A stretch of DNA of 64,000 nt, taken from positions 1,353,317 through 1,417,316 of the forward strand of contig OZ251243.1 of assembly GCA_965240325.2 (NCBI GenBank), read 5' to 3'. Origin of the DNA: Rebecca billardiae RCC1528 (Eukaryota > Protista > Haptophyta). Both the position numbers and the translations under genes were made by a program. The notes under the pieces are model-generated. The model was not told where the DNA came from and ran no database searches. It worked only from the letters and a program-made list of their open reading frames with translations. Of the stretch, positions 1,246 to 26,074 are shown piece after piece (the first letter of the stretch is position 1; each line of letters opens with the position of its first letter).

Positions 1246-1451
1246 GAGCGTGACGACGGTTGGCACAGTGATGCTAATCGCTACCGGTTCGCAGCCGGGG
1301 ATGTCTGGGCCTGTCGTCGGGCGGCGGGTCAGATTTGATGACGAGATTTCTGAGATCGCCGCCAGATCTCACCCTTGGATCGGCGACCTTCGAGGCTGCC
1401 GGGCCCGGGCGGGCCGTCGCCAGCTCGCGGTGGGCGCCGCCATTCCCGCCA

Positions 1452-4832: not shown

Positions 4833-7451
4833 TCATCTCGCGGCCGTGGCCGCGTCCGCCTCGTCGCTGCGCCGCCGCTTGCGGCAGGGCGGCGGCGACG
4901 GCGCCGCCGGCTCCGCGGTGAGCCGGTCGAGCACGAGCACCGCGAGCTCGGCGCACAGCAGCACGGGCACGTGGTAGTACTCGCGCGGCGCCGCCTTCAC
5001 CTGCGCGGCGTGCCGCACGCGGCCGGTGCCGGGCGCGCGCTCGCACTGCTCGCACGGCGCCGCGTCCGAGCACGGCGGGCGCAGCGCGCCCTCGGGCGGC
5101 GCCACGCTCGCGCTGCGCCCGCGCCCGACGAGGATGAGCTGCGTCGGCTTCCGCGCGCCGTGCACCGCTGGCTCGAACGCGCCCGCCTCGCCGGCGCCGC
5201 CCTCGCGCGCGCGCGCGCGCCCGCCGCGCACGCGGCCGTCGAGCGCCGCGTGCGCGTACGCGCAGTGCGTCGTCACGTGCAGGTGCGCGCGCGGCACGGG
5301 CGCCTCCTCGTGCAGCTGGCGCACGAGCGGCAGGCTGAACGCGCTCGCGCCCAGCGGCATCTCGAGCACCGCCTGGCTGCCGCCGTCCGTCGCCTCGTCG
5401 GCGAGCCGCGCGGCGAGCGCGTTGCGCGTCGCGAGCTGCTCCGCCTCGTGCTGCGGCACGGCGCGCGCGAGCTCGGCGGCGAAGCGGTGCCGGTTGTGGC
5501 ACGCGCCGCACGTCTGCCCGCCGTTGAGCACCGAGCTCTCGGAGCACGGGCTGCCGCCCGTGCCGAGCACGGGCGGGTTGGCCGCGCGCCACGCGTCGAA
5601 CGCCAGCGCGAACCGCGGGTCGAGCATGTTGGCGACGATCGCGAGCCGCTCGCCAGGCCGCACGTGCAGCGGCGTGCGCACCTCGCCCCGCGCCCAGTGC
5701 TGCAGCGTGAAGCCCGCGTCGGCCACGAGCGTGCGCAGCAGGTCGGGGTCGCGGTCGACGGCGACGGCGGCGAGGCGCACGCGCGCGCCGCCGGGCGCGC
5801 GCGTGTGCGCCCCCACCGCGTCGCCCACGTGCAGGAACCAGCGCAGCACCGAGGCGCCGCCCGCCGGCGCCTCCACCGCGACCGGCGCGACGCGCGCCGC
5901 GCCCGCGGCGCCGCCCTCGCCGCTGAGCGCGGCCTCGAGCGTGCCCGCGCGCAGCGGCGCGGGCGCGTGCGCGCTCAGGTCGAGCGGCCCGCCGCGCGCG
6001 AGCAGCCGCGCGAGCGCCGCCTCGGGCTGCGGCGCGAGCCGCGGCGCCGCGCCGCCGCCGCCCGCGCGGCGCCGCCACAGCGCGGCGTACACGGCGGCGA
6101 CCGCGGCGGGCGGCGGCGGCCGCGGCGGCGGCGGCGCGGGCCGCGGCGGCGGCGGCGGCGGCGGCGGCGGCCGCGGCGGCGCGGCGGGCGGCACGCGCTC
6201 GGTGCGCAGCGCGCACGCCCGGGCGCCCTGCGCGAGGCGCGCGCCCACCGACGTGTCGGGCCCCCGCCCCATCGGCAGCAGGCGCGCCGCCATGGCGGCG
6301 ACGTCCTCCGTGCCGGGCTCGCCGCGCTGCGTGAGCGCGTGCGCGCCCACGCACGACCCGCGCGGCAGGCCGCGCGGGCCGACGGCGCCGGCGGGCGCGC
6401 CGAGCACGGCGCACAGATCGCCGAGCACGGCGCCCGCCGCCACGTGCAGCACGCGCTTCGGGATCACCCGGCCGCCCGCGCCGCCGCCCACCGCCTTCTC
6501 GCCCGCGTACACGATCCACACGGGCGGCGCGCGCGCGCCGGCCGGCTGCGCGCGCAGCGCGGCCACCGCGCGCTCCAGCTCGCCGCGGCCCTGCCGAGCG
6601 CCGCCGACGGTGCCGATGTGGTAGCGCTTGGCCGGGCGCTCGAACTGCAGCTCGTCGCGCCACTTCGCGAGGCACGTCACCTCGACCACCGTGCCGCCGC
6701 CGAGCGCGGCGGCCAGGTCGCCCGCCGGCGGCTCGCCCGCCGCGAGCGCGCGCGCCACCGCGCGCGCGCGCGCGTCCGCGCACGCGGCGCGCACGTGCGC
6801 CTCGCACGCGGCGGCCGAGCCGCCGGCGCGCACGAGCTCGCACGCGGGCGCGGCGTCGAGCGCGCGCGGCGCGCGCGGCGCGGGCGGCGCGCGCGGCGCG
6901 CGCGGCGCGCGCGGCGCGCGCGGCGCGGTGCTCAGTGCGAGCAGCTCCTCGCGCGCGCGCTCGAGCGAGCCGCCCGCGCGCTCGAGCGCGCGGCGCGCCA
7001 CGTCCGCCGCGCCCCCCGTCAGCCGCGCGCCGCCCCCGCGCGTCGCGGCGTCGCGCACGCACCGCAGCGCGTCGGCGCGCGCGCGCCCGTCGCCCGCGCG
7101 CGCGCACGCGTACGCGAGCTGCAGCAGCGCCGTCGGGCGCACGCGCGCGCCCGGGGCGGAGGCCTGCGTGTAGAGCCTCGCCAGCGCGTGCGGAGCGACG
7201 CCCGCCGCCGCCATCGCGGCGCGCAGCTCGCCCCACAAGCCCACGCCGCGCGCGGAGCGGCAGCGCGCGCCGCTGCCGGCGGCGCGCCCCGGCGCGCCCG
7301 CAAGCGGGCCTGCCTCGTAGGCCGCGATGAAGGCGCTGGCCGCGTCGGCGACGAGCAGCTGCTCGGCGAGCCGCGCGCAGCAGAGCAGCGCGTCGGCCTG
7401 CTCCAGCGCGTCGTTGAGCGCGGCGGCGAGCGGCGCGAGAGATGCCGTCAT
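4833..7451 (-). CDS. 872-aa protein with C-terminal divergent C5-cytosine methyltransferase-like domain (virus/retroelement type; domain ~4925-5850), Pro-rich linker and uncharacterised N-terminus
   Basis: Ordered motifs WFLHVGDAVG (I-like), AVAVDRD (II), IVANMLD (III), GTGGSPCSESS (IV, PC), AVLEMP (VI, cf. ENP), THCAYA...RKPTQL (cf. YCxYG...KPT), a Cys/His cluster (PCSDAAPCEQC...RH) and YYHVPVLLCAEL (cf. terminal IPxxL). ATG at 7451, GC3-rich codons. Confidence 0.7.
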   Translation of the reverse strand: MTASLAPLAAALNDALEQADALLCCARLAEQLLVADAASAFIAAYEAGPLAGAPGRAAGSGARCRSARGVGLWGELRAAMAAAGVAPHALARLYTQASAPGARVRPTALLQLAYACARAGDGRARADALRCVRDAATRGGGARLTGGAADVARRALERAGGSLERAREELLALSTAPRAPRAPRAPRAPPAPRAPRALDAAPACELVRAGGSAAACEAHVRAACADARARAVARALAAGEPPAGDLAAALGGGTVVEVTCLAKWRDELQFERPAKRYHIGTVGGARQGRGELERAVAALRAQPAGARAPPVWIVYAGEKAVGGGAGGRVIPKRVLHVAAGAVLGDLCAVLGAPAGAVGPRGLPRGSCVGAHALTQRGEPGTEDVAAMAARLLPMGRGPDTSVGARLAQGARACALRTERVPPAAPPRPPPPPPPPPRPAPPPPRPPPPAAVAAVYAALWRRRAGGGGAAPRLAPQPEAALARLLARGGPLDLSAHAPAPLRAGTLEAALSGEGGAAGAARVAPVAVEAPAGGASVLRWFLHVGDAVGAHTRAPGGARVRLAAVAVDRDPDLLRTLVADAGFTLQHWARGEVRTPLHVRPGERLAIVANMLDPRFALAFDAWRAANPPVLGTGGSPCSESSVLNGGQTCGACHNRHRFAAELARAVPQHEAEQLATRNALAARLADEATDGGSQAVLEMPLGASAFSLPLVRQLHEEAPVPRAHLHVTTHCAYAHAALDGRVRGGRARAREGGAGEAGAFEPAVHGARKPTQLILVGRGRSASVAPPEGALRPPCSDAAPCEQCERAPGTGRVRHAAQVKAAPREYYHVPVLLCAELAVLVLDRLTAEPAAPSPPPCRKRRRSDEADAATAAR

Positions 7452-7627
7452 CGCTGCCGGCCGTCCACTTCAGCCTGCCTGGAGCTGTGCCCATTCTACC
7501 GTAAGTATCGTTTCCATTTTGAGCCGACGAATCAGGGGACCCGCGTCGTCCTACCCGCGTCGTTACACCCGGAGCCCGTTATACTAAGGGAGAAGTTTGT
7601 CAGTACACTCATTATTTTCAAGTAGTG

Positions 7628-7670
7628 CTGCCTGAGCTGTGTGCGTCTCTTATACTGACTTAGTAAACTG
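7628..7670 (-). mobile_element. Transposon-like terminus, family A (copy 2), followed by TA
   Basis: CTGCCTGAGCTGTGTGCGTCTCTTATACTGACTTAGTAAACTG|TA, a direct repeat of 4414-4452. Confidence 0.65.
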
Positions 7671-7759
7671 TAAAGGCAGTAGGCGCTGCTGCAAGCTTCG
7701 ACTTATTAAATCATCATAGAATTAGTAGACGAGATTAGTACCCGCCCCGTACCGTCCTA

Positions 7760-7804
7760 CAGTTTACTAAGAATTATCAGAGACGCACACAGCTCAGGCA
7801 GGCG
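7760..7804 (+). mobile_element. Transposon-like terminus, family A (copy 3, inverted), preceded by TA
   Basis: TA|CAGTTTACTAAGAATTATCAGAGACGCACACAGCTCAGGCAGGCG, the reverse complement of 4411-4452 with a small indel. Confidence 0.65.
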
Positions 7805-8129
7805 GCCAGAACCAGTAGTAGTGGTAGTGCCGTGCGCAATCAACGGCCGATCCCCAGTGGCCAGTTCGTGATTCGTCAAGGGTTACTCCCCGTATCCTCG
7901 GCCAGCTGGCAGAGTTTGCCGCGATGTTGGGCACTGCGGTTTCGTCAGATGCCGAGGGCGCCCGGCCTCGGCGCGGGGCGGCCCCGTCGCCCCCGCGGCG
8001 CTGCGCGGCGCCGCGCCGGTGGCCGGCGCAGTGGGCCGTGGGCGGTGGCAGCCGGGGCCGCGCGTCGGTGCGCGGGGCCGCCGATGCCGTGTCGTGCATG
8101 AGCCGCGGTGGCTGAGCGCGCTAGCCTCA

Positions 8130-9250
8130 CGCCGCGGCGACGCGGCACGTGGCGCCGCGCCGCCTCGACGCATCCCCGCGGCGGCGGCGGTGGCCCGGCG
8201 GCGAGCCAGCCGAGCGCTTGCGCCACGAGCCCGGCGCGCGGCACGGGCGCGTGGCGCCGCCCTCGCCTGCGCGGCCGCACCCGAGCACGGCTACGCGCAG
8301 CGCCCGCGCCCGACGAGGACGAGCCCCACCGAGCCTCCGCGCGCCGTGCATCGCCGGCCGGCTCGAACGCGCCCGACTCGGCGGCGCCGCCCTCGCGCGC
8401 GCCCGCGCCGCACGCCGCGCTCGCGGCTGGCTGCCGGGCGCCGCGCCAGCGGAAGCGCCCGCGGGCCGCCGGCGCCTTTGGTGGCGATGTCGTCGGCCTC
8501 GCACGGGCTCGCGCTGGCGAGCGGCGCGCAGGGCGAGAGCGGCATGGGCGCGCCCTCGCCGCCGCTGCCCGGCCGCCTGTCGCGCGGCGGCGCTGTCGTC
8601 GCGGGAGGCGACGACAGACTCTCGCCCCGCCGCCATCGCCCCGCCGCCATGACCCGAGAGACCAAGGAGAATCACAGCGCAGGCAGGCGAGATTGAACAC
8701 AGTTTTGTTGTGATTCTCCTTGGTCGTTTTGTTGTTTTATTGATGTGATTCTCCTTGGTCGCCGGTTCACGATGGTTGCTGATGACCGGCCCGGCCGGGT
8801 GCCCAACTTGGCGGGCGGCTCGCCGCGCAGGCGGGCGCGCTGCGTGGCGCGCACGCACACCGCGCGTCGCGCGTACGCGTGGTGCCCAGCTAAACTGCGA
8901 GATGGCGCGCCCGCTGCTGCGACCGCGTGACGGCGGCCCCGTCGCTCGCCGCGTGCGCGGCGGTTGCCCCCGTGGTCGCGCTCGGCGCCCGACAGTGCGC
9001 GTCGCGCTCCGAGCGCTCGCCGAGCGAAGCGGCGCGGGCCGCGTTGGGGCGGAGCCTCCATGCAGCCTCACACTGCACGCGAGCTGAGCCGATGCGCTCG
9101 CGCCGCGTCCGCTCTCCCTCGGCCCGCGCATGACCCCAGCTGCGGCGGCGGTCGCAGCCGTGCGATGTCGCGGCGCTTGGCGGCGCGCTCATCGCCACGC
9201 GCCTCTATGACGGGCGCGTCCCGCCGCGCGCAAACGCGCCCCACGAGGCC
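8130..9250 (-). pseudogene. Decayed, frameshifted copy of the MTase-like domain of 4833-7451
   Basis: 8302-8404 aligns closely at DNA level with 5117-5222 (REGGAAESGAFEPA / LVLVGRGR vs REGGAGEAGAFEPA / LILVGRGR). HHAYA near 8876 matches HCAYA near 5254. Outer boundaries are approximate. Confidence 0.6.
8660..8760. repeat. Three copies of the 17-bp motif GACCAAGGAGAATCACA (one forward, two inverted)
   Basis: Forward at 8660-8676; reverse complement at 8709-8725 and 8744-8760, within an AT-rich patch. Confidence 0.85.
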
Positions 9251-9515
9251 GCCGCGACCGCACCGCGCTCGCTTCGAGCCGGCGCGCGCTGGGCGCGAGC
9301 GTCTGCGGCGGCCGAGTCGGCTGCTGCTACTGCTAGCTGTTGCGGCCGTTGCCGCTCGCCGCGCCGAGCAGCGCACGACGCCGGCGGATGGCGCGGCCCT
9401 CGTGCAGTGACACGCTTGACGGTCTCGGGGCGCGCCTAGGTTATACTTATTACACATATATTTGTATATACGTACTACTTGTAATAATATATATACTTAT
9501 ATATAATAATTATTA

Positions 9516-11367
9516 CAGTGGGCGGGTCTCACTGGGGGACCTGCAAAACAACGGACCGGAGTTTTGGCGAAGCTTCGGCGGTTGCGCGGCGGACGGCGGC
9601 GGCGGCTTCGAAGCCGCCCCCACGAGGAGGCGCGGGCGCTGTGGCGCGAGGCGAATGCAAGTCCGCCGCGTGAGCCGGCGGGGAAGTGAGCACCACGAGT
9701 TGTGAGGCGAACCTGGGCGATTGCGGACGCGCGCAAGCTCAAGGCGCCGCCGAATCGTGGCGACTGGCTCCACGACCAGAGGCACAAGCCGGGTGCCCGC
9801 GCTGGTGCGCGCTCGCGCGGCGCGCCGACCGTGCGTCCGCGGGGTGCAAAATCGGGCACGGTGGTTCCGCACGAGTTTCAATGAGCAACGCGTTCCAGAA
9901 GTTCCGCTTGAAAACGCCCGCCGGAAGCGCGGTCACCATACCTGACATCTGCTGCGGCGCCCCTCGCGTCGACATCGTGCGGCGCGGCCACCGACTCCGC
10001 GCCCGCGCGCAGAATGGGAGGGGCTGGTGCAGGAGCAGATGCAGGACTCGGACGCCGAGGAGAAGTCGAGCGCCACGTTCCGCACCCACCGCTACGCATA
10101 CGGCGCTCCTGGGCGAAGACTGCCACTGTGCGGGTGGGCTGTCTCTTCGCGAGCTCTCAGCGTGGAGTCAGCGATCAAGCTGAGGTTGCAGCGCGGCAAC
10201 ATCGTGCAGGGTGGGCGGGTACCGACGCCGCGCTTCGCACGCCGTCTGCGACGGCATCAAACGCCGCGACCACCGCGGCGCCCGGCCAGCGTGGCAGCAT
10301 CGGGCCTGCTGACGGCGGGCGTGACGGTCGGGCGCGGGCGCGGTGGCATCCCGGGGCGCGGGGGCGAGTGCAGCAGCGGTGGCGGGCGCGGCTGCTGGCA
10401 GAGCGCATCTCGCGACGAGGAGTCACTCGGCGCGCACGTCACGCCGCGCGCGATATCGATTCGTCGCCCGGCGAGCGCGGCAGCACCGGGCCTGCTGAAT
10501 GCGGGCGTGACAGCCGGGCGGGCGCCGCAGCGGTCGGGCGCTGCGCCTGCCGCGCTGGCGCGGCACTGTAGCCGGGGCGGCGCGGTGGCAGACGCCGCGG
10601 CGGCGGACGCCGCGGCGGCCGGCGCGACGGCGGGTGGAGCGCATCTCGCGACGAGGAGTTACTCGCCGCGCACGTCACGCTGCGCGCATCTTCGAGGGGT
10701 CGCCCGGCGAGTGCGGCAGCACCGGGCCGGCTGATGGCGCAGCGACGGCGGTCGCGGCGGCGGCAGCCGGCGCGGCGGCCGCAGCGGCGGCCGGCTCGGC
10801 AGCGGCGGGCGCTGCGGCGGGCGGTGCGCATCTCGCCACAAGAAGACGTTCGGTGCGAACTTCACGCCGCGCACACCATCGAGCGGGGTCTGCGGTGCTG
10901 CTTCGGCAAGCGCGTCAGCTGCACCTCCGGCCGAGCGACGAGTCGACGCAAACGACAACGCGCGACGCATCGAGCTGTGTTCCGAGCAGTGCCATTCACA
11001 TTGGCGCTAGTGGCAGCGGTGGGCTGTACACGCTGACGACGCAGCGAGGCGTGAGGTGGTGGTCCACGCCACCGTCGTACCGCGTCGCCTCGCGCACCCC
11101 GAGCGCGCGCGACGAGCTGTACGGGCACGGAAGCTGACAGCATCCCCGCGCCCGGCGCCGCGACCGCGACCCCGCGCAGGCCAGGGGCCCTCCCGGAGAG
11201 CTGATTTTCGTCCGCGCGCTTTGCTGAAGTCGCGCTGGTGAGCTCAGACGCCGGCGCATACCCCGCCGGCGCTAGTCTGTCGCACCCCGTTTGTTCCGAG
11301 TCGCTGAGACCGCGCCGATCGTCAGATAGTTTTGAATTTCTGCTCCGCCAGTGGGACCAGCCCACTG
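9516..11367. mobile_element. Non-autonomous TA-flanked TIR element (family B, ~1.85 kb)
   Basis: Left end TA|CAGTGGGCGGGTCTCACTGGGGGA; right end (reverse complement) TA|CAGTGGGCTGGTCCCACTGGCGGA. TA on both sides (9514-15, 11368-69), inserted in a TA-rich island. No transposase ORF recognised. Confidence 0.7.
10215..10880. repeat. Degenerate tandem repeat (~3 units of ~190-235 bp) inside the TIR element
   Basis: Recurrent GCGCATCTCGCGACGAGGAG (~10403, ~10639, ~10827) and CCCGGCGAG..GGCAGCACCGGGCC.GCTGA (~10281, ~10467, ~10703). Confidence 0.75.
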
Positions 11368-12617
11368 TAATTATATATAATAATATATGTATATACTCAT
11401 ATACTGTACGTGACCGACACACTCCCGACTCCGCGTCGTAGACGTAGTCGGTCCGCGGGACGACTCCGCCACTGTCTGACACACCGACCGACACACATCA
11501 TGCTTATTATTATTCAGTTATTGTCAACTCGCCTCCGTGGCGCGCTGCCGCCGAGCCCGGGCGGGAAGATTCGGGAAGATTCGGCGGCGTCGCTCCAGCC
11601 TGGCCGCCGGTCGACTGCTCTCGAGGCAGCCCGCTCCGCGCGTGGCAGGCCGCCTGCGTCCCGACACTCATCAGTTGCACTGCGCGCCGGGCGGTCTGGG
11701 CGCGGGGTCAGCGACGACGGGCAGCGATGATGGGCGCGGCTATTGGCGAGCCTTGGCCGTATGCATCGTGCGTGCGCATCGTCCTGTCCAGCAGCCATCA
11801 CCCGTGCCCGCCGCCGCCATGTCGTCACGGCCAGTGCGCGTAGCCCAACCACGCGGCAACTGCTGGCAAGGGGCGAGCCTCGGCGCAGCACGTGGCGCCG
11901 CGGCCGAGATCGAGGCGTGGCGCCCTGCAGCATGCGCACCCATCTCGACGCGCTGACGTGGCCGATCAGCTCCAGTCACGTACGCAGCTCGTCTAGCGGA
12001 CGTCGCAGCCGCTGCTCAGGCTCGGCCGCTCAGGCTGCGATGCGATCCGCGGACCGGGTGTGCGACCCTCACCGGACTGGTCGGCGCCGGTGACTCACCG
12101 CGCGCACTGGCGAGAGCATTTGCAGCCGGTGCCCATGTACATGCCCCGGCGTGGCCCGCGCGAGAACGCCTCAAAATCCGCCCTGCGCGGGCCATGCGCG
12201 CGCCCTCGACAGCGCGGGGCTGAGGCTGCCCGGACCGAGCGCCGGGCGAAATGCAGCATGCCTGCGCGGCGGAGAGAGGCGAGGGTGCTGGGCGAGAAGG
12301 AGGCGGGGAGGCTCTTCAGCGTCTACTGGCGCCATCCGGCTGGCGCGCGCGGGCGTGACCGCCGTGGGCGCCGCGCATCAACCTGCGCAAGCGAAGCGCG
12401 CGTGGTGCGGCCAGCCACTCGGACGGCCGCATCGCCCGATCGCGCCGTGCGTGCGCGGTGACGACTGGCGAGTCCGGTTGATGGCCAAAAGCTTCCGTCC
12501 GCCGGCTCACTGGTCAAGCAGCCGCGAGCTCAAGGCGCTCGCCACTGCTGCACGCCTTGCGCCGCTCCGAGCTCTCTCCGCCGCGGTTTTAGGCGCCGGC
12601 GCTCACCGCGTGCCGCG

Positions 12618-14192
12618 ATGCCGCTCGAGCTCATCGAACTGACCGATGCCAGCACCCTCGCCATCTCCGGCCAGGGCGTCGCCATCGGCACGGAGGCTGG
12701 CGAAGGGGGGGCCGACGTGCGCGCGAACGCCGAGACGCTCGCCAAGACCACAGGCATCATCATCGTGCCCAGCGGCGGCGATGCAGCCCAAGTACGGCGT
12801 CAGCTGCGCGAGCTGCGTCCGGACGATGGCAACGCCGTGGCCTGCCGCGTCATCCTCTGCAGTGATCTCGCAGACCTGCTGCTCGGGCCCAACGCGAGCG
12901 CGGCCGCGCGCACCCCGGACGCGCTGCGCGCGCGCGCTGCAAAGATCGACGCGTCCTGTGCCATGTCGGCCGTTCTCAAACAAGTGGCGGCGCGTGCGGC
13001 GCGCGCCGACGAGTCGCCACCGGCCTCGAGCACGGACCTGCCCACGCGCGCCCAGCTTGATCCCTGCTCGATCGCGCAGTGCATGCAGCTGCCGCCCGAG
13101 TGCGCGGCTGCTCCCGGCATGCGCATCGCGATTTTGCAGCTGTTCACCAACGCCGACGGCCTGGCCGCCATCGGTCCGGCGGCCGAGCACGCGTTCGGGC
13201 CCCTCGGCCAGCGCCGCGACGGCCTGCCGCTCTACCGCACCCTCAACCCCGGGCTCGGCCGCGAGTCCGCCTGTGCATGCGCTGTCAGTCGGCGCGTCGC
13301 TCTCGCGCGGGGCTGCGTGGACGCCACCCAGGCCGCGCGCATGCGCACGATCACGTACCTCGCGTCGACTGACCAGTGGCGGGACGGCGCTCCCCCGTCC
13401 GATCTCGGCCGCGCGTACTTCGGCGAGCGCTTCGAGGTGTTTGATGCCGATTACAAGCCCGCGGCGCTCTGCGACCTCGCCGCGGGAGGCGGCGGCGGGC
13501 GCGATGGCTTCGCCTGGGTCGTGGCCAGCCTCCACGACGCCTATCTCGCGGCCGTTAGCATGTGCTCGCAGTGCCCGGCCCTCGGCGGCGTGCTCGACGG
13601 TTTTGAGCCGAAACCCTTCCTGCTCGTCATGTGCGCCGCCGTCGTCCGGAGCGTCATCAGCGATCACATCGACGTGGCGGCCGCAGACCTGGCCTCAAAG
13701 GTCGCGCGCGTGCTCGGCGCCGACGAGGAGACGTCGGAGCACGTCCAGTGGTTCGTGAAGCTGCTGCAGCGCGAGGCGTGCGCCGCCTTCTTCGGTCGTG
13801 TGCAGAAGCGCGAGATACTCCCCGCATCGCACGCCCAGCCGTACGTCCTGTCCGAGTCGTCCGTGTTCGGTGCCGACGTGGCGCTGGAGCGCGCGGTGGA
13901 GGCGCTGGTGGGCGGGTGCGACTGCGCCGTGCGCCGCGCCGCCGCCGAGTCCAGTGGCGCGGACGTCGTGCTCGGCGCCAGCACGATCGACTCGCACGTC
14001 GTCGTGCGCGTGCCGGAGGGTCTCGCCGACGGCTTCGTCAAGAACCTGGAGGCCAAGTTGCGCGCTGTGCCGGGCGAGCTCCTCGGGGAAGATGCGTATA
14101 GTCCCCTGCGAGCGGTGTGCGTGCGCGGCGCCTCGGGCGGGAAGCTCTCGGCCGCCATGAACGCGCTGTACACGGAGGTGACGAAGGTTTAG
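12618..14192 (+). CDS. Highly divergent family-A DNA polymerase-like protein (524 aa)
   Basis: TQAARMRT (R241, cf. TGRLSS), GRAYF, FDADYKPAAL (D278, motif A), EPKPFL (K332, motif B position), ERAVEALVGG (cf. ERAAINAPMQG), STIDSHVVVRVPE (D458, motif C) and SPLRAVCVRGASGGKL (cf. POLQ-type C-terminus ...GASWGEL). Spacings R-D 37, D-K 54, D-D 180 compare with E. coli Pol I R668/D705/K758/D882 = 37/53/177. The N-terminus resembles an inactive 3'-5' exonuclease fold. Confidence 0.7.
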   Translation: MPLELIELTDASTLAISGQGVAIGTEAGEGGADVRANAETLAKTTGIIIVPSGGDAAQVRRQLRELRPDDGNAVACRVILCSDLADLLLGPNASAAARTPDALRARAAKIDASCAMSAVLKQVAARAARADESPPASSTDLPTRAQLDPCSIAQCMQLPPECAAAPGMRIAILQLFTNADGLAAIGPAAEHAFGPLGQRRDGLPLYRTLNPGLGRESACACAVSRRVALARGCVDATQAARMRTITYLASTDQWRDGAPPSDLGRAYFGERFEVFDADYKPAALCDLAAGGGGGRDGFAWVVASLHDAYLAAVSMCSQCPALGGVLDGFEPKPFLLVMCAAVVRSVISDHIDVAAADLASKVARVLGADEETSEHVQWFVKLLQREACAAFFGRVQKREILPASHAQPYVLSESSVFGADVALERAVEALVGGCDCAVRRAAAESSGADVVLGASTIDSHVVVRVPEGLADGFVKNLEAKLRAVPGELLGEDAYSPLRAVCVRGASGGKLSAAMNALYTEVTKV

Positions 14193-14288
14193 TTCACGCG
14201 CCGTCTCGTCAGAGTCCCTCGTCCCTGACGGAGCAACCGTCCGCGAGCGTTCACGCCAGGGCCGCGGGGCGCCCATCATATGATGTGA

Positions 14289-14357
14289 TATATATATATA
14301 TATATATATATGAATATATATATATATATGAATATATATGAATATATATGAATATAT
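14289..14357. repeat. (TA)n / (GAATATATAT)n microsatellite downstream of the polymerase-like gene
   Basis: Directly visible TA run with tgaatatata units. Confidence 0.9.
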
Positions 14358-14428
14358 CAGCAGCAGCAGCAGTGAGTCAGTGCAGCAGTGAGGTGCTACG
14401 ACTTGTTAATGTTATTATTCTAATAATA

Positions 14429-14795
14429 CAGTGGGCGGGTCGATCTCCTGACCGCTCGGGGAGCACGGGGCAGGCTCGACCAGCTGCTACCAGCGGCTGA
14501 GACTGCCAGCCGTGACATCCGGACCTGCACCATGTCCATCGCCCTCGCTCGGGGCACACGGCAGGGCCATGCGAGCCGCGCAGCGCAGGTGGATCGCGCT
14601 CCAGCAGCTCAAGGCCGCGCTCAAGCAATCCGATCGCGGTGCAGGCTATGCTCTGCCACCAACGCCGACTTCGTGTCGACGATCGGGCACTGCCGCCGAC
14701 GAATCAGGAGACCCGCGTCGTCCTACCTGTGTCGTTAAATCATAGAATGTGTCCATGGGCCGGGGCCTGCAAACCAACGGACCGGAGTTTTGGCC
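14429..14795 (+). mobile_element. Orphan, interrupted left end of the family B element
   Basis: TA|CAGTGGGCGGGTC at 14429, then ~310 bp of other sequence, then CCTGCAAACCAACGGACCGGAGTTTTGGC (~14766-14794) matching 9540-9568. The insert carries GCCGACGAATCAGG.GACCCGCGTCGTCCTACC, which also occurs at ~7523-7555. Confidence 0.6.
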
Positions 14796-16626: not shown

Positions 16627-17701
16627 GGGTGTCCAGGGTGCGCAACTCGCAGTGCGCAGCGCGGCGGAGGCTCACTCATCGCGAGGTCGCCGCTCGCCAG
16701 TGGGACTCGCCCGCCTGCCGCCGTGCACGGCGGCGGAGCCGCTCGCGCCGTGCGCTCCTGCGGCCGTCGGATCGGGCTGCGTAGGCGGCGCGCGGCTTGG
16801 GCCGTCGCTGAGCCACCCAGCGCCCCTCGCTGCGCCGCGCGCCTTCCTCGTCCTCGCCTCCTCCGCGCCTTGAAGCAGCACGCGCGGCGCCGCCACAAAA
16901 GCAGCGCAGGCGCTCGCGTGCAAGCGCGCGCGCGCGGCGCGCGACGGGCTCGACTCGGGGCTCGCGCCGCTGCGGGGGCATGCAGTGCTATCACGTGCGC
17001 GCGCGACGCCCCCTCGAGCCTGCGCATCGCTGTGACCGTCACGCGCCAAATGCTCACACGTCCTCGTGTTGAAGTAGGCCCAATCTGACCAGAACCTGCC
17101 ATGCGTCAGGACGCCTTCTTAGGCAAGACACGATGACAGCTACGTACGCGGCGCTTCTCAGCAAGCGTGGAGACCACAAGAGAAGCGCACGCAAGCATGA
17201 CCGTCTCCGCGTCGATCGCGTCGACGCACTCAAGGCCCGTTGTGGAAGCTTCCGTCGCACGTGCGATGATGCCAAGTCAGACCATTTTGAAACGTGCATC
17301 AGCGTGCACTGACGGTCAAACGCGCAGGCTCGAGGGGGCGTCGCGCGCGCATGTGATAGCACTGCATGACCCCGCAGCGGCGCGAGCCCCGAGTCGAGCC
17401 CGTCGCGCGCCGCGCGCGCGCTTGCACGCGAGCGCCTGCGCTGCTTTTGTGGCGGCGCCGCGCGTGCGCGTGCTGCTTCAAGGCGCGGAGGAGGCGAGGA
17501 CGAGGAAGGCGCGCGGCGCAGCGAGGGGCGCTGGGTGGCTCGGCGACGGCCCAAGCCGCGCGCCGCCTACGCAGCCCGATCCGACGGCCGCAGGAGCGCA
17601 CGGCGCGAGCGGCTCCGCCGCCGTGCACGGCGGCGGACTCGTCCCACTGGCGAGCGGCGACCTCGCGACTGCGCACTGCGAGTTGCGCACCCTGGACACC
17701 C
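16627..17701. mobile_element. Fold-back element: ~390-bp inverted arms around a ~300-bp lower-GC spacer
   Basis: 16627-17025 is the near-perfect reverse complement of 17322-17701 (GGGTGTCCAGGGTGCGCAACTCGCAGTGCGC... / ...GCGCACTGCGAGTTGCGCACCCTGGACACCC), with small indels. No clear target-site duplication. Confidence 0.8.
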
Positions 17702-17819
17702 TTGCTACAGTTTATTTATTGTAGTTTAAGGCTCACGGTGGCAGGTTGCCGCGCCATCCTTCACAGTACCGCGAAACCGCTTCGGCCAAGCTCGTCGCCG
17801 CTCTAGGCGCGTGTGGCGG

Positions 17820-20800
17820 ATGGCGGCTCTACCGGCGCCGATCGCGCCCGCCGCTGGCGGCGCGTCCGGCCACGTCTGCGTACTCGAACCGCCGCCGGAT
17901 GGCGAGTCACTGACGCTCTGTGCTCGGCTGGCCCAGGCCGTGCAGCTCGCACGCGCCGACGCTGCCCTCGGCCGCGCCGCCGCCGCTGCCCTCGGCCGCG
18001 CCGCCGCTGACGGCGGTGCCGGCCAGGTCTGGTGCCGCGGAGGGGTCCACGTGCGGCCGCTGGGCGACGACGGCGTCGGCCGCGGCCTATTCGTGGTGTC
18101 CGCGCGCACCGCATCGGTGAGGCGGTGCGCGCAGTCTGATTGGACGGCGGTCGTCACGCCCGTATTGTTTGACGACGGCCGTGCGGACCACCTCTGCTCG
18201 CTCGAGCCGGTGGTGGTGGGCACGGCGGAGGCGCTCGCCGAGCTGGGCCGGGCCGCCGGCACCACGTCGGGCGCGGCCGCCGCGGCAGGCTGCGGCGTCG
18301 CCGCCGCCTTTGCGCCGCGCGCAAGCGGCGACGCAGTGACCGCGCAGACGCTGTTCAGCGCGTTTGAGGGCGGCTCGGTGAGGGCGGGCGCTCTGTGGCT
18401 CGCGGCGGCGAAGCGGCGCGACGCGGCGGCGGACGACTCGCTCGCGTGGCCGCCGCGCGCCGAGCCCGCTCGCACTGCGCCGCCCGACGGGCTCTCCGAT
18501 GCCCCGAGTTCCGCGTGGTGCTTTGGCACAGCCGTGCAGCTGTCGGCGGCGACGGCAGCAGAGTTGTCACGCGCGATGCCGGTGGAAGAGGACGGCCTCG
18601 TGTTTGCGTGCTCCGCTACGCCACTCGCCGTCGTGTGCGACGCGCGTGCCCAGGCGGACGGCGCGGTGCCGCGCGGCTGGTCAGCCGTGTGGCTGCCGAC
18701 AGTGACGCTCAGCGCCGCCGACGAGTCCACTGGGTCGCACCGGGCCATGGTGCTGAACGAGGTGACTGCGGTGAGACTGAGGTGCGCTGAGGGGGAGCAG
18801 GCGCAGCTGCTGCAGCTGGCGCTCGAGGTCGCCGTGCTGGTCCACGCGTGCGAGCTCCACGCCAAGCCGCGGCACGTGCAGTGCCTCCACGCAGGCGCCG
18901 CTCGGCTCGGCGCGCCGCGCTCGGCGACCAACAGGGACATCGGCTGCACGACGCCGACCCCGCTGGAGCGCGCAGACGGCGCCGAGTTGACCGAGAGCAC
19001 GCGCTGGCTCGCCGGTCACTTTGCGCTCTCGGCGCTGGTGCTGCGCACGCCCAGCGCAATGCGGAGCGGGCTCGACGCGCGACTGGGCCGCGTGAGCAGC
19101 AGCCGCGACACAGTCAGCGCCAAGTGGGGCGCGGACTCACGCATGCGCGCAGCGCTGATGGCAGCGGCAGTGCGTGGGCATCTCGACCGGTGGGAGGCGC
19201 CGTCGTTCATCTCGCCGCCTTCCGATGGCGAGCCGACCTTCCTCGCCAGGTACGCCCTCGCCGTGGCGCCGTCGGCCGGAGCCGGCGCGAACGCCCCGCC
19301 CGTGCCGCCGTCGGACGGGCGGCTGCCGCGTGCGGACTCGGGCGGCAGCCATGCATATCGCACGGGGCAGTCGGAGTCCCAAAGTCAGACGGCGGCGCGG
19401 CTGCCCGCGGGCACGCGGCGCGCGCAGTCGGTGGAGGGATCGTCGCCGGCCGAGTCGCTCGCGCCGCCGGTGGTACCACGCGCGGAAGGATCGCTGCCCG
19501 AGCACGAGCCGCTCGTGCAGCCGCCCACTGTGGCCGGGCAGGGCGCTGCACAGCCGGCCGCGCCGCCGAGCCTGCTGCCGGCGCCGCCGGCGGCGGCCGG
19601 GCGGGGCGCGACACAGCCGGCCGCGCCGCCGCTCGTGCTGTCGGCGCCGCCGCCGGCGGCGGCCGGGCGGGGCGCGGAGGAGCAGGCAGCGCAGCCGAGC
19701 CTGTCGCCGCCGCCGCTCGCGGCGGCCGGGCGGGGCGCGGAGGAGCAGGCAGCGCAGCCGAGCCTGCCGCCGCCGCCGCTCGCGGCGGCCGGGCGGGGCG
19801 CGAAGGAGCAGGCAGCGCAGCCGAGCCTGCCGCCGCCGCCGCTCGCGGCGGCCGGGCGGGGCGCGGAGGAGCAGGCAGCGCAGCCGAGCCTGCCGCCGCC
19901 GCCGCTCGCGGCGGCCGGGCGGGGCGCGGAGGAGCAGGCAGCGCAGCCGAGCCTGCCGCCGCCGCCGCTCGCGGCGGCCGGGCGGGGCGCGGAGGAGCAG
20001 GCAGCGCAGCCGAGCCTGCCGCCGCCGCCGCTCGCGGCGGCCGGGCGGGGCGCGAAGGAGCAGGCAGCGCAGCCGAGCCTGCTGCCGGCGCCGCCGGCGG
20101 CGGCCGGGCGGGGCGCGACACAGCCGGCCGCGCCGCCGCTCGTGCTGTCGGCGCCGCCGCCGGCGGCGGCCGGGCGGGGCGCGAAGGAGCAGGCAGCGCA
20201 GCCGAGCCTGCCGCCGCCGCCGCTCGCGGCGGCCGGGCGGGGCGCGAAGGAGCAGGCAGCGCAGCCGAGCCTGCCGCCGCCGCCGCTCGCGGCGGCCGGG
20301 CGGGGCGCGAAGGAGCAGGCAGCGCAGCCGAGCCTGCTGCCGGCGCCGCCGGCGGCGGCCGGGCGGGGCGCGACACAGCCGGCCGCGCCGCCGCTCGTGC
20401 TGTCGGCGCCGCCGCCGGCGGCGGCCGGGCGGGGCGCGAAGGAGCAGGCAGCGCAGCCGAGCCTGCCGCCGCCGCCGCTCGCGGCGGCCGGGCGGGGCGC
20501 GAAGGAGCAGGCAGCGCAGCCGAGCCTGCTGCCGGCGCCGCCGGCGGCGGCCGGGCGGGGCGCGACACAGCCGGCCGCGCCGCCGCTCGTGCTGTCGGCG
20601 CCGCCGCCGCCGGCGGCCGGGCGGGGCGCGAAGGAGCAGGCAGCGCAGCCGAGCCTGCCGCCGCCGCCGCTCGCGGCGGCCGGGCGGGGCGCGGAGGAGC
20701 AGGCAGCGCAGCCGAGCCTGTCGCCGCCGCCGCTCGCGGCGGCCGGGCGGGGCGCGAAGGAGCAGGCAGCGCAGCCGAGCCTGCCGCCGCCGCCGCTCGC

Positions 20801-22739
20801 GGCGGCCGGGCGGGGCGCGAAGGAGCAGGCAGCGCAGCCGAGCCTGCCGCCGCCGCCGCTCGCGGCGGCCGGGCGGGGCGCGGAGGAGCAGGCAGCGCAG
20901 CCGAGCCTGCCGCCGCCGCCGCTCGCGGCGGCCGGGCGGGGCGCGGAGGAGCAGGCAGCGCAGCCGAGCCTGTCGCCGCCGCCGCTCGCGGCGGCCGGGC
21001 GGGGCGCGAAGGAGCAGGCAGCGCAGCCGAGCCTGCCGCCGCCGCCGCTCGCGGCGGCCGGGCGGGGCGCGAAGGAGCAGGCAGCGCAGCCGAGCCTGCC
21101 GCCGCCGCCGCTCGCGGCGGCCGGGCGGGGCGCGGAGGAGCAGGCAGCGCAGCCGAGCCTGCCGCCGCTCGCGGCAGCCGGGCAGGGCGCTGCACAGCCG
21201 GCCGCGCAGCCGAGCCTGCCGCCGCTCGCGGCAGCCGGGCAGGGCGCTGCACAGCCGGCCGCGCAGCCGAGCCTGCCGCCGCTCGCGGCAGCCGGGCAGG
21301 CCGCGCCGCCGCAGCCGACAGCGCCGGGCGCCGCGCCCTCTGCGTCGCAGCGGCTGCCCTTGCCCGCCGGCACGCCGATGGCCTCCTCCGCGGCGTGCGC
21401 GCAGCCAGTGCGTCCGGTGTTGCCGCCCTTGTCCGCTGCGCGTCCGGCGCACGCGCCGCGGCCCCTGCGGCTGCACGAGCAGTCGCACGCGCAGCCACTC
21501 GCGGTCGATGGCGACTGCTTCGACGATGTCGGCGATCTCGATGACACGCAGCGTGGCATTGCGCGTGCGTGGGCACGCGGCGCAGTCGACGTGCTCGACG
21601 CTCGCGAGACCGGGCCCGCCCACTTCCAAGCGCACCGCGGCGCGCGCTACGCGATGTGGGTCTCATCGGCTGGCGGCTGGGAGATCGCGCGCGAGGTGCG
21701 CTTCGAGGCCGTCGAGTTCAAGCCGATCGTGAGCTTCTCGCTCGGCGCGACCGGCGATCTGTCCGTCGCGCGTCTGTCGGCCGGCGCTGCCCTCGGAGCC
21801 GCGCAGCCAGTCGGCAACGTCCTCGCCGTCGACGTCGGCGCGCGCGCCGCGCTCGGTTTGCAGCAGCCCGGCGTGCACACGCGTCGCGCCAGTGCCGCTG
21901 GCGCCTCCGACGCCGTCGGCGCCGCGCCGGCGGCAACGCAGCGCGAGCTAGCCCACCCGGCCGTGTTCGTGCTCCTGTGCGCGGTCGCGCTGGCGGCGCT
22001 TCAGCACGGCCTCCTCTCCAGCGAGTCGACCGAGACGGCCGGCCGCGTCACCGCGGCGCCGTCGACGGGCGAGGGCGGCGGTGCGACGGCCGGCACGCGA
22101 GTCGGCAGCGTGCCACACGGCGAGCTCCTCGCGCTCGTCGCGTTCCGGCTCGCGCTCCGAACCGCGTGCAGCACCGACGACGCCCTACAAGCCGCGGTAG
22201 ACGCCTCGCTGGTGCTGGCGGAGCTCCAGACGTGCGCCAAGCGCGACGCGAAGCAGTCGGCCAAGGCCATTGTCCATCTGCTGCGCCACGCGTACACGGC
22301 GCTGCGCACGGGCATGGCCGTTGAGCAGCGCCCCTTGGCGCTGCACTTCGTGTCCGTCGCCAACGAGTCAGTCCGCTACGCGTTCTTCGTGCGGCTGGGC
22401 GAGCACTTGACGCGCGTGCTGAGCGCGCCGCACACCGAGACGCTGCAGGCGCGCAGGGAGCGCGCGCTCGCCGGCGCGCGCGTGCTCCTCCTCCTCTCGG
22501 AGCTCGTGCAGGACGCGAACCGCGCCAACTCGCCGCGCATGTACCGCCTCGCGCGCATGCTCGTGCTCAAGGTGGGCCAGACGAGCGGGTGGCCCGACCG
22601 CGGCGACGACGCCAATGGGTACTGGAGCAACTACCGCAAGCAGGTGGCCGGCGGCCTCGCCGACCAGGACGTCCGATTCCTGTGCGTGGCGGACACGACC
22701 ATCATCAACGGCGAGTGCGCGGACGTGTGGGACGCTGAG
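17820..22739 (+). CDS. Exon 1 of a ~2300-aa protein (long Pro/Ala-rich repeat; start of a T5orf172/GIY-YIG-like segment)
   Basis: ATG at 17820; globular-looking, GC3-rich frame up to ...VWDAE at 22739, after which this frame becomes Arg-rich junk and coding continues in the 22615-24828 frame. Confidence 0.75.
19530..21310 (+). repeat. Coding minisatellite, ~60-bp unit (AAAGRGA[E/K]EQAAQPSLPPPPL), ~29 units with interspersed variant units
   Basis: Directly visible tandem repeat that preserves frame; variant unit AAAGRGATQPAAPPLVLSAPPP recurs. Confidence 0.95.
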
Positions 22740-22842
22740 GTGCGCGCCGTATCGCCCGGCCCGCGCGCTCCCGCCGCGCCGCGCCGTACGCCCCGCGCGC
22801 TCACGCCGCGCCGCCCGCCCCGCGCGCGCGCGCCGCGCGCAG
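22740..22842 (+). other. Predicted spliceosomal intron (103 bp, phase 0)
   Basis: GAG|GTGCGC...GCTCAC (branch-like, ~22799)...GCGCAG|CGG. Removing it joins the two long frames exactly in phase (…WDAE|RSLKD…). Confidence 0.8.
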
Positions 22843-25853: not shown

Positions 25854-26074
25854 CCGGGCCGCGAGCGGCCGAGCCGGCTCGAGCGGCGGGTGCGAGCCAT
25901 GGGCGGTGCCGGGCCGAGGCGTGACCGGGCCGCGAGCGGCAGAGCCGGCCCGAGCGGCGGGTGCGAGCCACGGGCGGCGCCGGGCCGAGGCGTGACCGGG
26001 CCGCGAGCGGCAGAGCCGGCTCGAGCGGCGGGTGCGAGCCAAGGGCGGCGGTGCCGGGCCGAGGCGTGACCGGG
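25854..26074. repeat. Minisatellite, ~71-74-bp unit, 3 copies
   Basis: GTGACCGGG recurs at ~25921, ~25992 and ~26066 with conserved intervening sequence. Confidence 0.85.

What the first reader, a model, noticed from the sequence alone, without database searches (positions are those of the whole stretch)
12618..14192. Family-A polymerase-like protein with both metal-binding Asp retained, an Ala steric gate, a degenerate O-helix and a shortened thumb
Seen: R241, D278 (DADYKPAAL), K332 and D458 (IDS) are spaced 37/54/180, versus 37/53/177 for Pol I R668/D705/K758/D882, and there is a POLQ-like GASxGxL tail. The position equivalent to E710 is Ala283. Established: Klenow E710A relaxes ribonucleotide exclusion. 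Equivalents of R754, Y766, N845, Q849, H881 and E883 appear lost, and there is little room for a full thumb between the exonuclease-like N-terminus and the palm. Inference: this is not a replicative polymerase; it may be a template-independent or ribo-nucleotidyltransferase, a primase-like enzyme, or a pseudoenzyme. Its position near a chromosome end is suggestive only.
Basis: partly seen in the sequence, partly recalled or inferred. Interest (0 to 1): 0.8.

Follow-up and report, generated by a model that had tools for sequence, protein, structure and literature searches.

The report
Orphan protein with polymerase-A-like fold
A real 524-residue gene near a chromosome end of an unidentified, very GC-rich eukaryote encodes an orphan protein; its C-terminal half is predicted to fold like the palm and fingers of a family-A DNA polymerase, but it lacks almost all the signature catalytic residues, so it is most likely a degenerate, re-purposed polymerase domain rather than a working polymerase.

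Summary
The ORF 12618-14192 (+) is a real gene. Its GC1/2/3 is .73/.53/.88, whereas chance ORFs of equal length in the satellite are flat.

No sequence method sees a polymerase: Pfam, NCBIfam, PHROGs, PDB phmmer and profile, a PolA HMM, and hhalign (probability 0.1-0.2%). The R/D/K/D spacing turns up in 9% of shuffles.

A full phmmer search of 1.84 billion proteins found only two relatives, of 519 and 530 aa and about 30% identity. Both come from the same sequencing runs as the window, so they are paralogues in one organism. In them R241, D278 and K332 are not conserved; D458 is.

AlphaFold2 with the three paralogues gives pLDDT 70-90 for residues 296-520. In that model all top-50 Foldseek PDB matches, and every named match in the viral top 50, are family-A DNA polymerases (E about 1e-5, probability 1.00 for nearly all). 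A poor single-sequence model gave only noise.

The model puts the motif-A strand at 298-304 (invariant S304 and D307), not at D278. D458 lies in a motif-C-like hairpin. No O-helix Lys or Arg is conserved.

Verdict: the fold call is supported, the residue mapping mostly is not. The protein is probably a degenerate or exapted PolA domain. The evidence rests on one shallow-alignment model.

The parts
12618..14192 (+). Single-exon CDS of 524 codons plus TAG; the orphan protein (P0001).
   Evidence: ORF. Coding periodicity GC1/2/3 = .73/.53/.88, confined to about 12600-14190. Identical sequence on two independent short-read contigs.
12618..13502 (+). N-terminal half (aa 1-295): fold unresolved. It is only marginally similar to the paralogues' N-termini.
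   Evidence: pLDDT below 50 in both AF2 runs. phmmer and blastp of aa 1-275 against the paralogues gave E 0.035 to above 0.6. No Pfam, NCBIfam or PDB match.
13449..13451 (+). Not supported.
   Evidence: Ala in P0002, Asp in P0003. Lies in a block with pLDDT about 26, 20 residues upstream of the first palm strand.
13503..14177 (+). C-terminal domain (aa 296-520): predicted family-A-polymerase-like palm plus helical fingers.
   Evidence: AF2 on alignment A1 gives pLDDT 70-90. Foldseek PDB top 50 are all PolA, E 2e-5 to 3e-4. Every named BFVD top-50 hit is PolA. This is the only part significantly conserved with P0002 and P0003.
13509..13538 (+). Motif-A-like element: predicted strand aa 298-304, followed by a helix from 307, with invariant G297, F298, W300, S304 and D307.
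   Evidence: Secondary structure of the model, invariant columns. hhalign places S304 opposite Klenow D705 and D307 opposite E710, at low confidence. The alternative register D307 = D705 is not excluded.
13962..14015 (+). Motif-C-like beta-hairpin (aa 449-466), with invariant S455 and D458 in the turn. The D458 codon is 13989-13991.
   Evidence: Strands 449-452 and 460-466 in the model, pLDDT 65-92. D458 is invariant. It aligns within one residue of Klenow D882.
14115..14150 (+). Last palm strand and the G504-x-x-G507 ...
   Evidence: Strand 500-503. G504, G507 and S511 are invariant. Aligned co-linearly with the Klenow C-terminal VGSGENW segment.
14278..14365 (.). AT-rich (TA)n / (TATATGAA)n island just downstream of the stop; a likely gene boundary.
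   Evidence: The short-read contigs L001 and L002 break here.

Best explanation
The gene encodes one member of a small, fast-evolving family of about 520-aa proteins, with three paralogues so far seen in only one organism. The C-terminal 225 residues or so descend from, or at least adopt the fold of, the palm and fingers of a family-A DNA polymerase.

The predicted layout is:
- a palm strand (298-304);
- an all-helical insert (307-444) in place of the fingers;
- a beta-hairpin (449-466) carrying the invariant D458;
- a helix, a last strand (500-503) and a C-terminal helix.

The triphosphate- and base-binding residues of the O-helix (motif B), the TGR motif and motif 6 are not conserved. Of motif C only the Asp is kept, and motif A is at best reduced to S304/D307.

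I therefore think the domain no longer carries out canonical templated dNTP addition. It most likely survives as a degenerate (pseudo-enzyme) polymerase domain. Its palm-fingers cleft would act as a nucleic-acid-binding or protein-scaffold module, as inactivated family-B polymerase domains do in Pol epsilon, archaeal PolB2 and poxvirus F12.

Shown: the gene is coding, it has paralogues and no other relatives, the predicted fold matches PolA, and the named residues are conserved or not as stated.
Inferred: homology with PolA, loss of polymerase activity, and a binding or scaffold role.
For: - Coding signal.
- Relatives: only two, both from the same runs ERR14847148/51 at about 70% GC with the same codon signature. 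None in the 5.8-billion word index, nor in metagenome, viral or prokaryotic contigs.
- Fold: AF2 on the three-sequence alignment gives pLDDT 70-90 over 296-520. All top-50 Foldseek PDB matches are family-A polymerases, with probability 1.00. In BFVD every named top-50 match is one too, with probability 1.00 for most of them.
- Control: the poor single-sequence model (pLDDT 39) gives only random hits at E >= 1, so the match does not come from composition.
- Co-linearity: domain-restricted hhalign runs co-linearly over 206 columns. It pairs the family's LA..L...E.T..YV..F segment with PolA's O1/O2 helices, and the RVP... helix and final strand with PolA's C-terminus. Alignments of at least 200 columns occur in 2.7% of column shuffles.
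- Missing motifs: the positions opposite R754, K758, N845, Q849 and H881 carry HRH, ADG, ERS, GGG and DDD in the three paralogues. All 19 recognised PolA subfamilies strictly keep the catalytic residues of the TGR, A, B, 6 and C motifs (PMC10201439).
- Precedent for inactivated polymerase domains: PMC2669801, PMC2527604, PMC4304020.
Against: - The whole fold argument rests on one AF2 model built from three sequences (pTM 0.46). I could not see its coordinates, so I could not check where S304, D307 and D458 sit.
- TM-scores are low when normalised to the full length (about 0.26), and rmsd is 7-8 A.
- No sequence statistic supports homology. hhalign gives E 0.25-0.44. 20% of column shuffles score as well. 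Conservation profiles do not correlate (Spearman 0.01).
- With three sequences about 18% of columns are invariant, so invariance of D458 or D307 means little.
- Two invariant acidic residues near the canonical metal site could equally mean the enzyme is active.
- Archaeal PolB2, long called inactivated, was later reported active (bioRxiv 10.1101/2021.09.10.459716).
Confidence: 0.45

Rival explanations
1. It is an active but non-canonical nucleotidyltransferase built on a PolA scaffold. D458 (motif C) and D307 (or another acidic residue near motif A) would bind the metals. The steric-gate Glu is absent. A rebuilt fingers domain would bind NTP or dNTP without the O-helix Lys and Arg. Candidate activities are template-independent tailing, ribonucleotide addition or short gap filling, possibly at chromosome ends.
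For: - D307 and D458 are invariant in all three paralogues and flank the predicted motif-A strand and the motif-C hairpin.
- With D307 set equal to D705, the following residues read D-x4-[A/S]-[V/L]-[S/R]-M against Klenow D-YSQI-E-L-R-I-M. This puts Ala or Ser at the steric-gate position (sequence reading).
- E273, D286 and E330 are also invariant acidic residues.
- A predicted-inactive PolB2 turned out to be active.
- The gene lies on a chromosome end.
Against: - No conserved basic residue lies where R754 and K758 would be, and no conserved aromatic residue where F762 and Y766 would be. About seven residues of the O-helix are deleted in the co-linear alignment.
- E883 is replaced by Ser or Pro.
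- hhalign's own register puts Ser, not Asp, opposite D705.
- The C-terminal domain is acidic to neutral, with pI 5.1-6.8.
- There is no evidence of telomere linkage for the paralogues.
Confidence: 0.18
2. The PolA resemblance is an artefact of a shallow-alignment AlphaFold model. The protein would then be a lineage-specific orphan with some other alpha/beta fold of unknown function.
For: - Every sequence-based comparison is negative.
- The hhalign score is no better than in 20% of shuffles.
- Model pTM is only 0.46, the alignment has three rows, and the single-sequence model does not show the fold.
- A beta-alpha-beta unit with a helical insert is a common pattern.
Against: - pLDDT reaches 70-92 across a contiguous 225-residue domain.
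- 107 PDB hits at E <= 1e-3 and the whole PDB top 50, plus every named protein in the BFVD top 50, belong to one family. No reverse transcriptases, RdRps, family-B or X/Y polymerases, or other RRM-like palms are mixed in.
- The domain boundaries of the confident model coincide with the block conserved among the paralogues.
Confidence: 0.3
3. It is a chance ORF in very GC-rich DNA, not a gene.
For: At 72% GC stop codons are rare. ORFs of 525 aa occur in the non-coding satellite, and overlapping ORFs of 354 and 370 aa lie on the same stretch.
Against: - Strong frame-specific periodicity is confined to the ORF.
- Two paralogues have the same length, the same codon signature (GC3 0.90) and protein-level conservation at E about 1e-11 against 1.84 billion proteins.
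Confidence: 0.02
4. It is a functional, canonical family-A DNA polymerase (replicative, organellar or repair) that is merely very divergent.
For: The predicted fold.
Against: - No match to PF00476 or to a PolA HMM, even with filters off.
- Motifs TGR, B and 6 are absent from all three paralogues, whereas all 19 known subfamilies keep them strictly.
- Only about 300 residues precede the palm strand, against about 380 in Klenow.
Confidence: 0.02

Closest known systems
Bacterial and phage Pol I-type family-A polymerases (Klenow, KlenTaq, Bst large fragment; Pfam PF00476)
   Same: Best structural matches of the modelled C-terminal domain. The order of elements is the same: palm strand, helical fingers, beta-hairpin with an Asp in the turn, helix, last strand, C-terminal G-rich tail.
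   Different: - No detectable sequence similarity.
- No conserved TGR, motif B (R..K..F..Y) or motif 6 (N..Q).
- Motif C is reduced from HDE to x-D-[S/P].
- The motif-A Asp is uncertain.
- The stretch between the putative motif A and motif C is about 150 residues instead of 177.
- The N-terminal part is about 75 residues shorter.
Eukaryotic Pol theta, Pol nu and apicoplast POL (PREX polymerase)
   Same: Among the top Foldseek hits, with scores equal to the bacterial enzymes. Eukaryotic, with error-prone or template-independent activities in the case of Pol theta (PMC10201439).
   Different: These keep all catalytic motifs and are readily recognised by Pfam. There is no helicase or primase fusion here, and no specific affinity to any one subfamily could be shown.
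Polymerase-only (split) T7-like PolAs of 310-335 aa from phages
   Same: Best target-normalised TM-scores in BFVD: A0A8S5QSE8 (329 aa, TMt 0.40) and A0A060BK49 (313 aa, 0.36). They show that a PolA polymerase module can exist without a fused active exonuclease (PMC10201439).
   Different: Those are phage enzymes with intact motifs. The present protein is nuclear, eukaryotic, GC-rich and motif-poor.
Inactivated family-B polymerase domains (Pol epsilon C-terminal half, archaeal PolB2, poxvirus F12, helicase-fused inactive PolB of polinton-like elements)
   Same: An analogy in how it would work: a polymerase fold that has lost its catalytic residues and is kept for a structural or binding role (PMC2669801, PMC2527604, PMC4304020, PMC5499653).
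   Different: A different polymerase family (B, not A), so not homologous in any useful sense. My limited literature search found no described inactivated family-A domain.

Membership tests
Family-A DNA polymerase (PF00476 / PolA sensu Czernecki et al. 2023) | Significant sequence or profile match to the DNA_pol_A domain | tested here: not met
   - Pfam hmmscan at E <= 10: no family for the window protein or P0002, and only a weak DUF7855 match (E 0.028) for P0003.
- PolA HMM built from Klenow plus 8 phage PolAs, run with --max: no score for any paralogue.
- hhalign of A1 against the PolA alignment: probability 0.13%, E 0.44. Domain-restricted: E 0.25, no better than 20% of shuffles.
Family-A DNA polymerase | Palm plus fingers ('Klenow') fold | tested here: met
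   Predicted structure only. AF2 pLDDT is 70-90 for residues 296-520. The Foldseek PDB top 50, and every named BFVD top-50 hit, are PolA at E about 1e-5 to 1e-3. The control model gave only noise. Caveats: the alignment has three sequences and the coordinates could not be inspected.
Family-A DNA polymerase | Motif A: catalytic Asp at the end of the palm strand (D-[YF]-S-Q-I-E-L-R) | tested here: inconclusive
The strand 298-304 is followed by invariant S304 and D307. hhalign puts S304 opposite D705 and D307 opposite E710. The other register, D307 = D705, cannot be excluded.
Family-A DNA polymerase | Motif B / O-helix: R-x3-K-x3-[FYL]-x3-Y-G | tested here: not met
Columns opposite R754 and K758 read HRH and ADG. 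About 7 residues of the helix are deleted in the co-linear alignment.
Family-A DNA polymerase | Motif C: H-D-E in a beta-hairpin turn | tested here: inconclusive
   D458 is invariant, lies in the turn between predicted strands 449-452 and 460-466, and aligns within one residue of D882. The flanking His and Glu are replaced: I-D-S in the window protein, R-D-P in both paralogues.
Family-A DNA polymerase | TGR motif and motif 6 (N845, Q849) | tested here: not met
   No TGR in any paralogue. The only invariant Arg upstream is R255, in a low-confidence region. Columns opposite N845 and Q849 read ERS and GGG. These motifs are strictly conserved in all 19 subfamilies.
Family-A DNA polymerase | N-terminal 3'-5' exonuclease (DnaQ-like) domain, active or inactive | tested here: inconclusive
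   Residues 1-295 are modelled at pLDDT below 50. No Pfam or PDB match. No conserved DxE. D83 is the only invariant Asp after a predicted strand.
Family-A DNA polymerase | Nucleotide polymerisation activity | not testable with these tools
   Needs a biochemical assay.
Inactivated (pseudo-enzyme) polymerase domains | Polymerase fold retained while the catalytic and substrate-binding residues are lost across the family | tested here: inconclusive
   The fold is predicted. Motifs B, 6 and TGR are lost in all three paralogues. However, one or two candidate metal-binding Asp residues remain invariant, and the family has only three members.

The most novel reading that the evidence does not exclude
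A previously unseen branch of the family-A polymerase fold that is still catalytic. It would be a nucleotidyltransferase using D458 plus D307 for metal binding. It would have no steric-gate Glu and a wholly rebuilt nucleotide-binding fingers domain. It would be encoded by a lineage-specific, rapidly diversifying gene family in a very GC-rich protist, and might act on chromosome ends or in a conflict or defence setting.
Probability: 0.15. Interest if true: 0.85.

Novelty: new variant of a known kind. Interest (0 to 1): 0.55.

Why it matters
All 19 recognised family-A polymerase subfamilies keep their catalytic motifs (PMC10201439). The known 'dead' polymerase domains that my search turned up are all family B. 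A family-A fold stripped of motifs B, 6 and TGR, yet maintained as a three-member gene family, would be one of two things. It could be the first exapted or pseudo-enzyme PolA domain. Or, if active, it could be a polymerase with a re-invented nucleotide site, which would interest both polymerase evolution and enzyme engineering. It also shows that structure prediction with only two paralogues can recover a fold that every sequence method misses. The claim is still fragile: it rests on one predicted model from one organism, with no expression or activity data.

Tried and rejected
**Sequence searches that found nothing**
- Pfam, NCBIfam and PHROGs scans of the protein, its paralogues and the C-terminal pieces gave nothing relevant.
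- PDB sequence searches with the single protein and with the family profile gave nothing (one noise hit to inulin fructotransferase, E 0.46).
- Word-index searches with the protein, with the family alignment and with P0003 residues 250-500 returned only the queries themselves. The alignment search was saturated by 8000 low-complexity candidates and did not even recover P0002 or P0003, so its blank is uninformative.
- The search for related loci in metagenome, viral and prokaryotic genome contigs found no relative.

**Sequence-level tests of PolA kinship**
- hhalign against a PolA alignment built from E. coli polA and eight phage PolAs was not significant, either full length or domain-restricted, and not against column-shuffle nulls.
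- Correlation of conservation profiles was zero.

**Structure**
- The single-sequence AF2 model was unusable (pLDDT 39). Its Foldseek hits were random, so it served only as a negative control.

**Other ideas tested and dropped**
- Transposable element or recent duplication: the flanks of the three paralogues share no DNA similarity, and no terminal repeats bracket the gene.
- Telomere association of the family: the paralogue contigs hold no TTAGGG or satellite sequence, but they are only 2.3-4.7 kb long.
- Organism identification: the run accession is not in the paper library, the window has no rRNA, tRNA or Rfam hit, and the cluster look-up gives Logan only, with no names.
- Human origin: I do not take the window for human. 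It has 72% GC over 60 kb, intron-free ORFs with GC3 of 0.9-0.99, a 206-bp satellite and almost no recognisable proteins.
Full report
**1. The observation**

The window is about 72% GC. It ends in 1.7 kb of TTAGGG repeats (62335-64000), preceded by a 206-bp satellite repeated about 154 times (30617-62337). It is therefore a chromosome end of a very GC-rich eukaryote. I do not take it for human: 72% GC over 60 kb, intron-free ORFs with GC3 of 0.9-0.99, and almost no recognisable proteins.

At this composition long ORFs arise by chance. ORFs of 525 aa lie inside the satellite, and ORFs of 354 and 370 aa overlap the finding in other frames. ORF length is therefore no evidence of a gene.

The ORF 12618-14192 (+) nevertheless is a gene:
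- Its GC1/GC2/GC3 is .733/.531/.878. The neighbouring RCC1/UVR8-like gene has the same pattern (.761/.556/.873), whereas the satellite ORF is flat (.69/.73/.75).
- The periodicity begins at about 12600 and ends at about 14190, with non-periodic DNA for 5 kb upstream and 3.6 kb downstream.

**2. Is the motif spacing meaningful?**

It is not beyond chance.

**3. Relatives**

- Pfam, NCBIfam, PHROGs and PDB sequence searches find nothing at E <= 10.
- The word search finds only the protein itself.
- The protein was still open after these, so I ran the full phmmer search over 1.84 billion representatives. That search has no length filter, so longer or shorter kin and fusions were covered. It found two relatives: P0002 (519 aa, E 5e-12) and P0003 (530 aa, E 5e-11), about 30% identical over the C-terminal 230-310 residues.
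- Both relatives come from the same two Logan runs that also hold the window gene at 100% identity (ERR14847148 and ERR14847151). Their contigs are 70% GC and their GC3 is 0.90. They are paralogues in the same organism.
- P0002 and P0003 are 38% identical to each other along their whole length. The window protein's N-terminal half is at best marginally similar to theirs.
- Further searches found nothing: the family profile, P0003 residues 250-500, three contig collections and a cluster look-up.
- The flanks of the three loci share no DNA similarity, so this is not a recently mobile element.

**4.

In the three-way alignment A1:
- R241 falls opposite a gap.
- D278 is Ala in P0002.
- K332 is His or Ser in the paralogues.
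- D458 is invariant.

Other invariant positions include E273, L284-C285-D286, G297, F298, W300, S304, D307, G323, G324, G328, E330, R394, G432, S455, P466, G504 and G507. With three sequences about 18% of columns in the C-terminal domain are invariant, so a single invariant residue carries little weight.

**5. Sequence-level test of PolA kinship**

I built a PolA alignment from E. coli polA (Klenow part) and eight diverse phage PolAs fetched from annotated records.
- hhalign of the family against it gives probability 0.13% and E 0.44, in a wrong register.
- A PolA HMM run with all filters off gives no score for any paralogue.
- Restricted to residues 290-524 against Klenow 690-928, hhalign gives E 0.25. 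20% of column-shuffled controls score as well.
- That alignment is co-linear over 206 columns, which only 2.7% of shuffles achieve. This is a lead, not evidence.
- The conservation profiles of the two families do not correlate (Spearman 0.01).

**6. Structure**

- AF2 on the single sequence failed (pLDDT 39).
- With the two paralogues as alignment, residues 296-520 reach pLDDT 70-92. Residues 1-295 stay below 50, and pTM is 0.46.

The confident domain reads, in order:
- strand 298-304;
- helix 307-317;
- seven further helices up to a long one at 419-444;
- hairpin 449-452 and 460-466;
- helix 467-482;
- strand 500-503;
- helix 510-522.

This is the layout of a right-hand polymerase palm with a helical fingers insert.

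- Foldseek against the PDB returns 107 hits at E <= 1e-3. The top 50 are all family-A DNA polymerases: KlenTaq and its variants, Bst, Klenow 1kfd, Aquifex and M. smegmatis Pol1, apicoplast POL, Pol nu and Pol theta. E is 2e-5 to 3e-4, probability 1.00, with 236-273 aligned columns.
- Against the viral BFVD library, every named protein in the top 50 is again a family-A polymerase, with best E 9e-6. Several entries carry no name. The best target-normalised scores are for polymerase-only proteins of 313-334 aa.
- No reverse transcriptase, RdRp, family-B, X or Y polymerase is mixed in.
- As a control, the poor single-sequence model gives only unrelated hits at E >= 1.

TM-scores normalised to all 524 residues are about 0.26. 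This is expected if only about 230 residues match. The rmsd is high (7-8 A).

**7. Residue mapping under the model**

- The only strand that can be the motif-A strand is 298-304, so D278 (20 residues upstream, pLDDT about 26) is not the motif-A Asp.
- hhalign's register places invariant S304 opposite D705 and invariant D307 opposite the steric-gate E710. It also places invariant E330 opposite the conserved Asp of the PolA 'G-x-D-I-H' segment, and D458 one residue from D882.
- A three-residue shift would make D307 the D705 equivalent, with Ala or Ser at the gate position.

I cannot decide between these registers, because the tools give no coordinates or structural alignment. Either way:
- the steric-gate Glu is absent as such;
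- E883 is Ser or Pro;
- the O-helix Arg, Lys, Phe and Tyr, the TGR motif and motif 6 have no conserved counterpart;
- part of the O-helix appears deleted.

Czernecki et al. 2023 report strict conservation of these catalytic residues in all 19 PolA subfamilies (PMC10201439).

**8. Interpretation**

My most likely reading (about 0.45) is a lineage-specific, fast-evolving family whose C-terminal domain is a degenerate family-A polymerase palm and fingers. It would no longer perform canonical templated synthesis and would be retained as a binding or scaffold module. This would be analogous to the inactivated family-B domains of Pol epsilon, archaeal PolB2 and poxvirus F12.

Rivals:
- An active but non-canonical nucleotidyltransferase using D458 and D307 (about 0.18). 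The PolB2 precedent warns that 'inactive' calls can be wrong.
- The fold call is a modelling artefact and the protein is an orphan of another fold (about 0.30).
- A chance ORF, or a canonical polymerase (about 0.02 each).

Nothing ties the function to the telomere. The gene is about 16 kb from the satellite and 48 kb from the TTAGGG tract. The paralogue contigs are too short to say where they lie.

**9.

- The headline, 'family-A polymerase-like, not a replicative enzyme, degenerate O-helix, conserved motif-C Asp', is supported by predicted structure.
- The specific equivalences are not supported: D278 = D705, A283 = E710, K332 = K758, R241 = R668.
- The 37/54/180 spacing argument is at chance level.
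- The claims about the exonuclease-like N-terminus and a short thumb remain untested.

**10. Novelty and score**

I rate this a new variant of a known kind: a PolA fold without the PolA motifs, in an orphan eukaryotic family. Interest is 0.55. It would be a real surprise to polymerase specialists if confirmed, but it currently hangs on one shallow-alignment model with no coordinates inspected.

Noticed in passing
window 30617-62337 and 62335-64000: A 206-bp satellite (also scored as a 416-bp dimer), about 154 copies at 93% identity, runs directly into 1.7 kb of TTAGGG telomere repeats. It has constant negative GC skew and contains spurious ORFs of up to 525 aa.
   Followed up: partly
window 17811-24828: A long coding region (+) contains a 63-bp (21-aa) tandem repeat of 27.8 copies at 19532-21282. 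Its coding periodicity jumps to the frame of ORF 22615-24828 at about 22700-22800, with no stop in the first frame until 23999. This could be a short intron, a frameshift or an assembly indel joining two parts of one very large orphan gene.
   Followed up: partly
window 25850-29000: A block of nested tandem repeats (periods 46, 71 and 149-381 bp) with GC of about 0.80 and strong purine and AT skew. It has no coding periodicity, despite ORFs of 850-970 aa in several frames.
   Followed up: no
window 16627-17701: A near-perfect long inverted repeat. It has segmented arms of 33-169 nt at 92-100% complementarity, nested around a spacer of about 300 nt, in non-coding DNA between the finding and the next gene.
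   Followed up: no
window 7500-7800, 9473-9568, 11365-11404, 14278-14365, 14695-14794: Short AT-rich islands and (TA)n microsatellites punctuate the GC-rich DNA at gene boundaries. Two short motifs recur beside them: 7523-7565 matches 14695-14737 at 93%, and 9536-9568 matches 14762-14794 at 94%. They may be regulatory or boundary elements. The short-read contigs of this organism break at such microsatellites.
   Followed up: partly
window 226-1266 (-): The only conventionally recognisable gene in the window: an RCC1-repeat protein (UVR8/HERC2-like, E 5e-58 to PDB) with a weak F-box-like N-terminus.
   Followed up: yes
window 1335-2627 (+), 3277-3963 (-), 4833-7451 (-), 22615-24828 (+): These ORFs are clearly coding. 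GC3 is 0.97-0.99 for 1335-2627 and 4833-7451, and 0.88 for 22615-24828. None has a Pfam match; 1335-2627, 4833-7451 and 22615-24828 were also searched against PDB sequences without a match (3277-3963 was not). The subtelomeric gene set of this organism is almost entirely orphan. The finding's gene has a lower GC3 (0.88) than 1335-2627 and 4833-7451.
   Followed up: partly
window 7500-12600: Five kb upstream of the gene shows no coding periodicity. It holds GC-rich degenerate repeats: 10276-10827, with about 236-bp spacing and 15-bp GCG-rich sub-repeats.
   Followed up: no
L005 504-1244 and 3601-4587: The paralogue P0003 is flanked on the same strand by two further orphan ORFs (246 and 328 aa) with no Pfam match. 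The gene neighbourhoods of the three paralogues are unrelated.
   Followed up: partly
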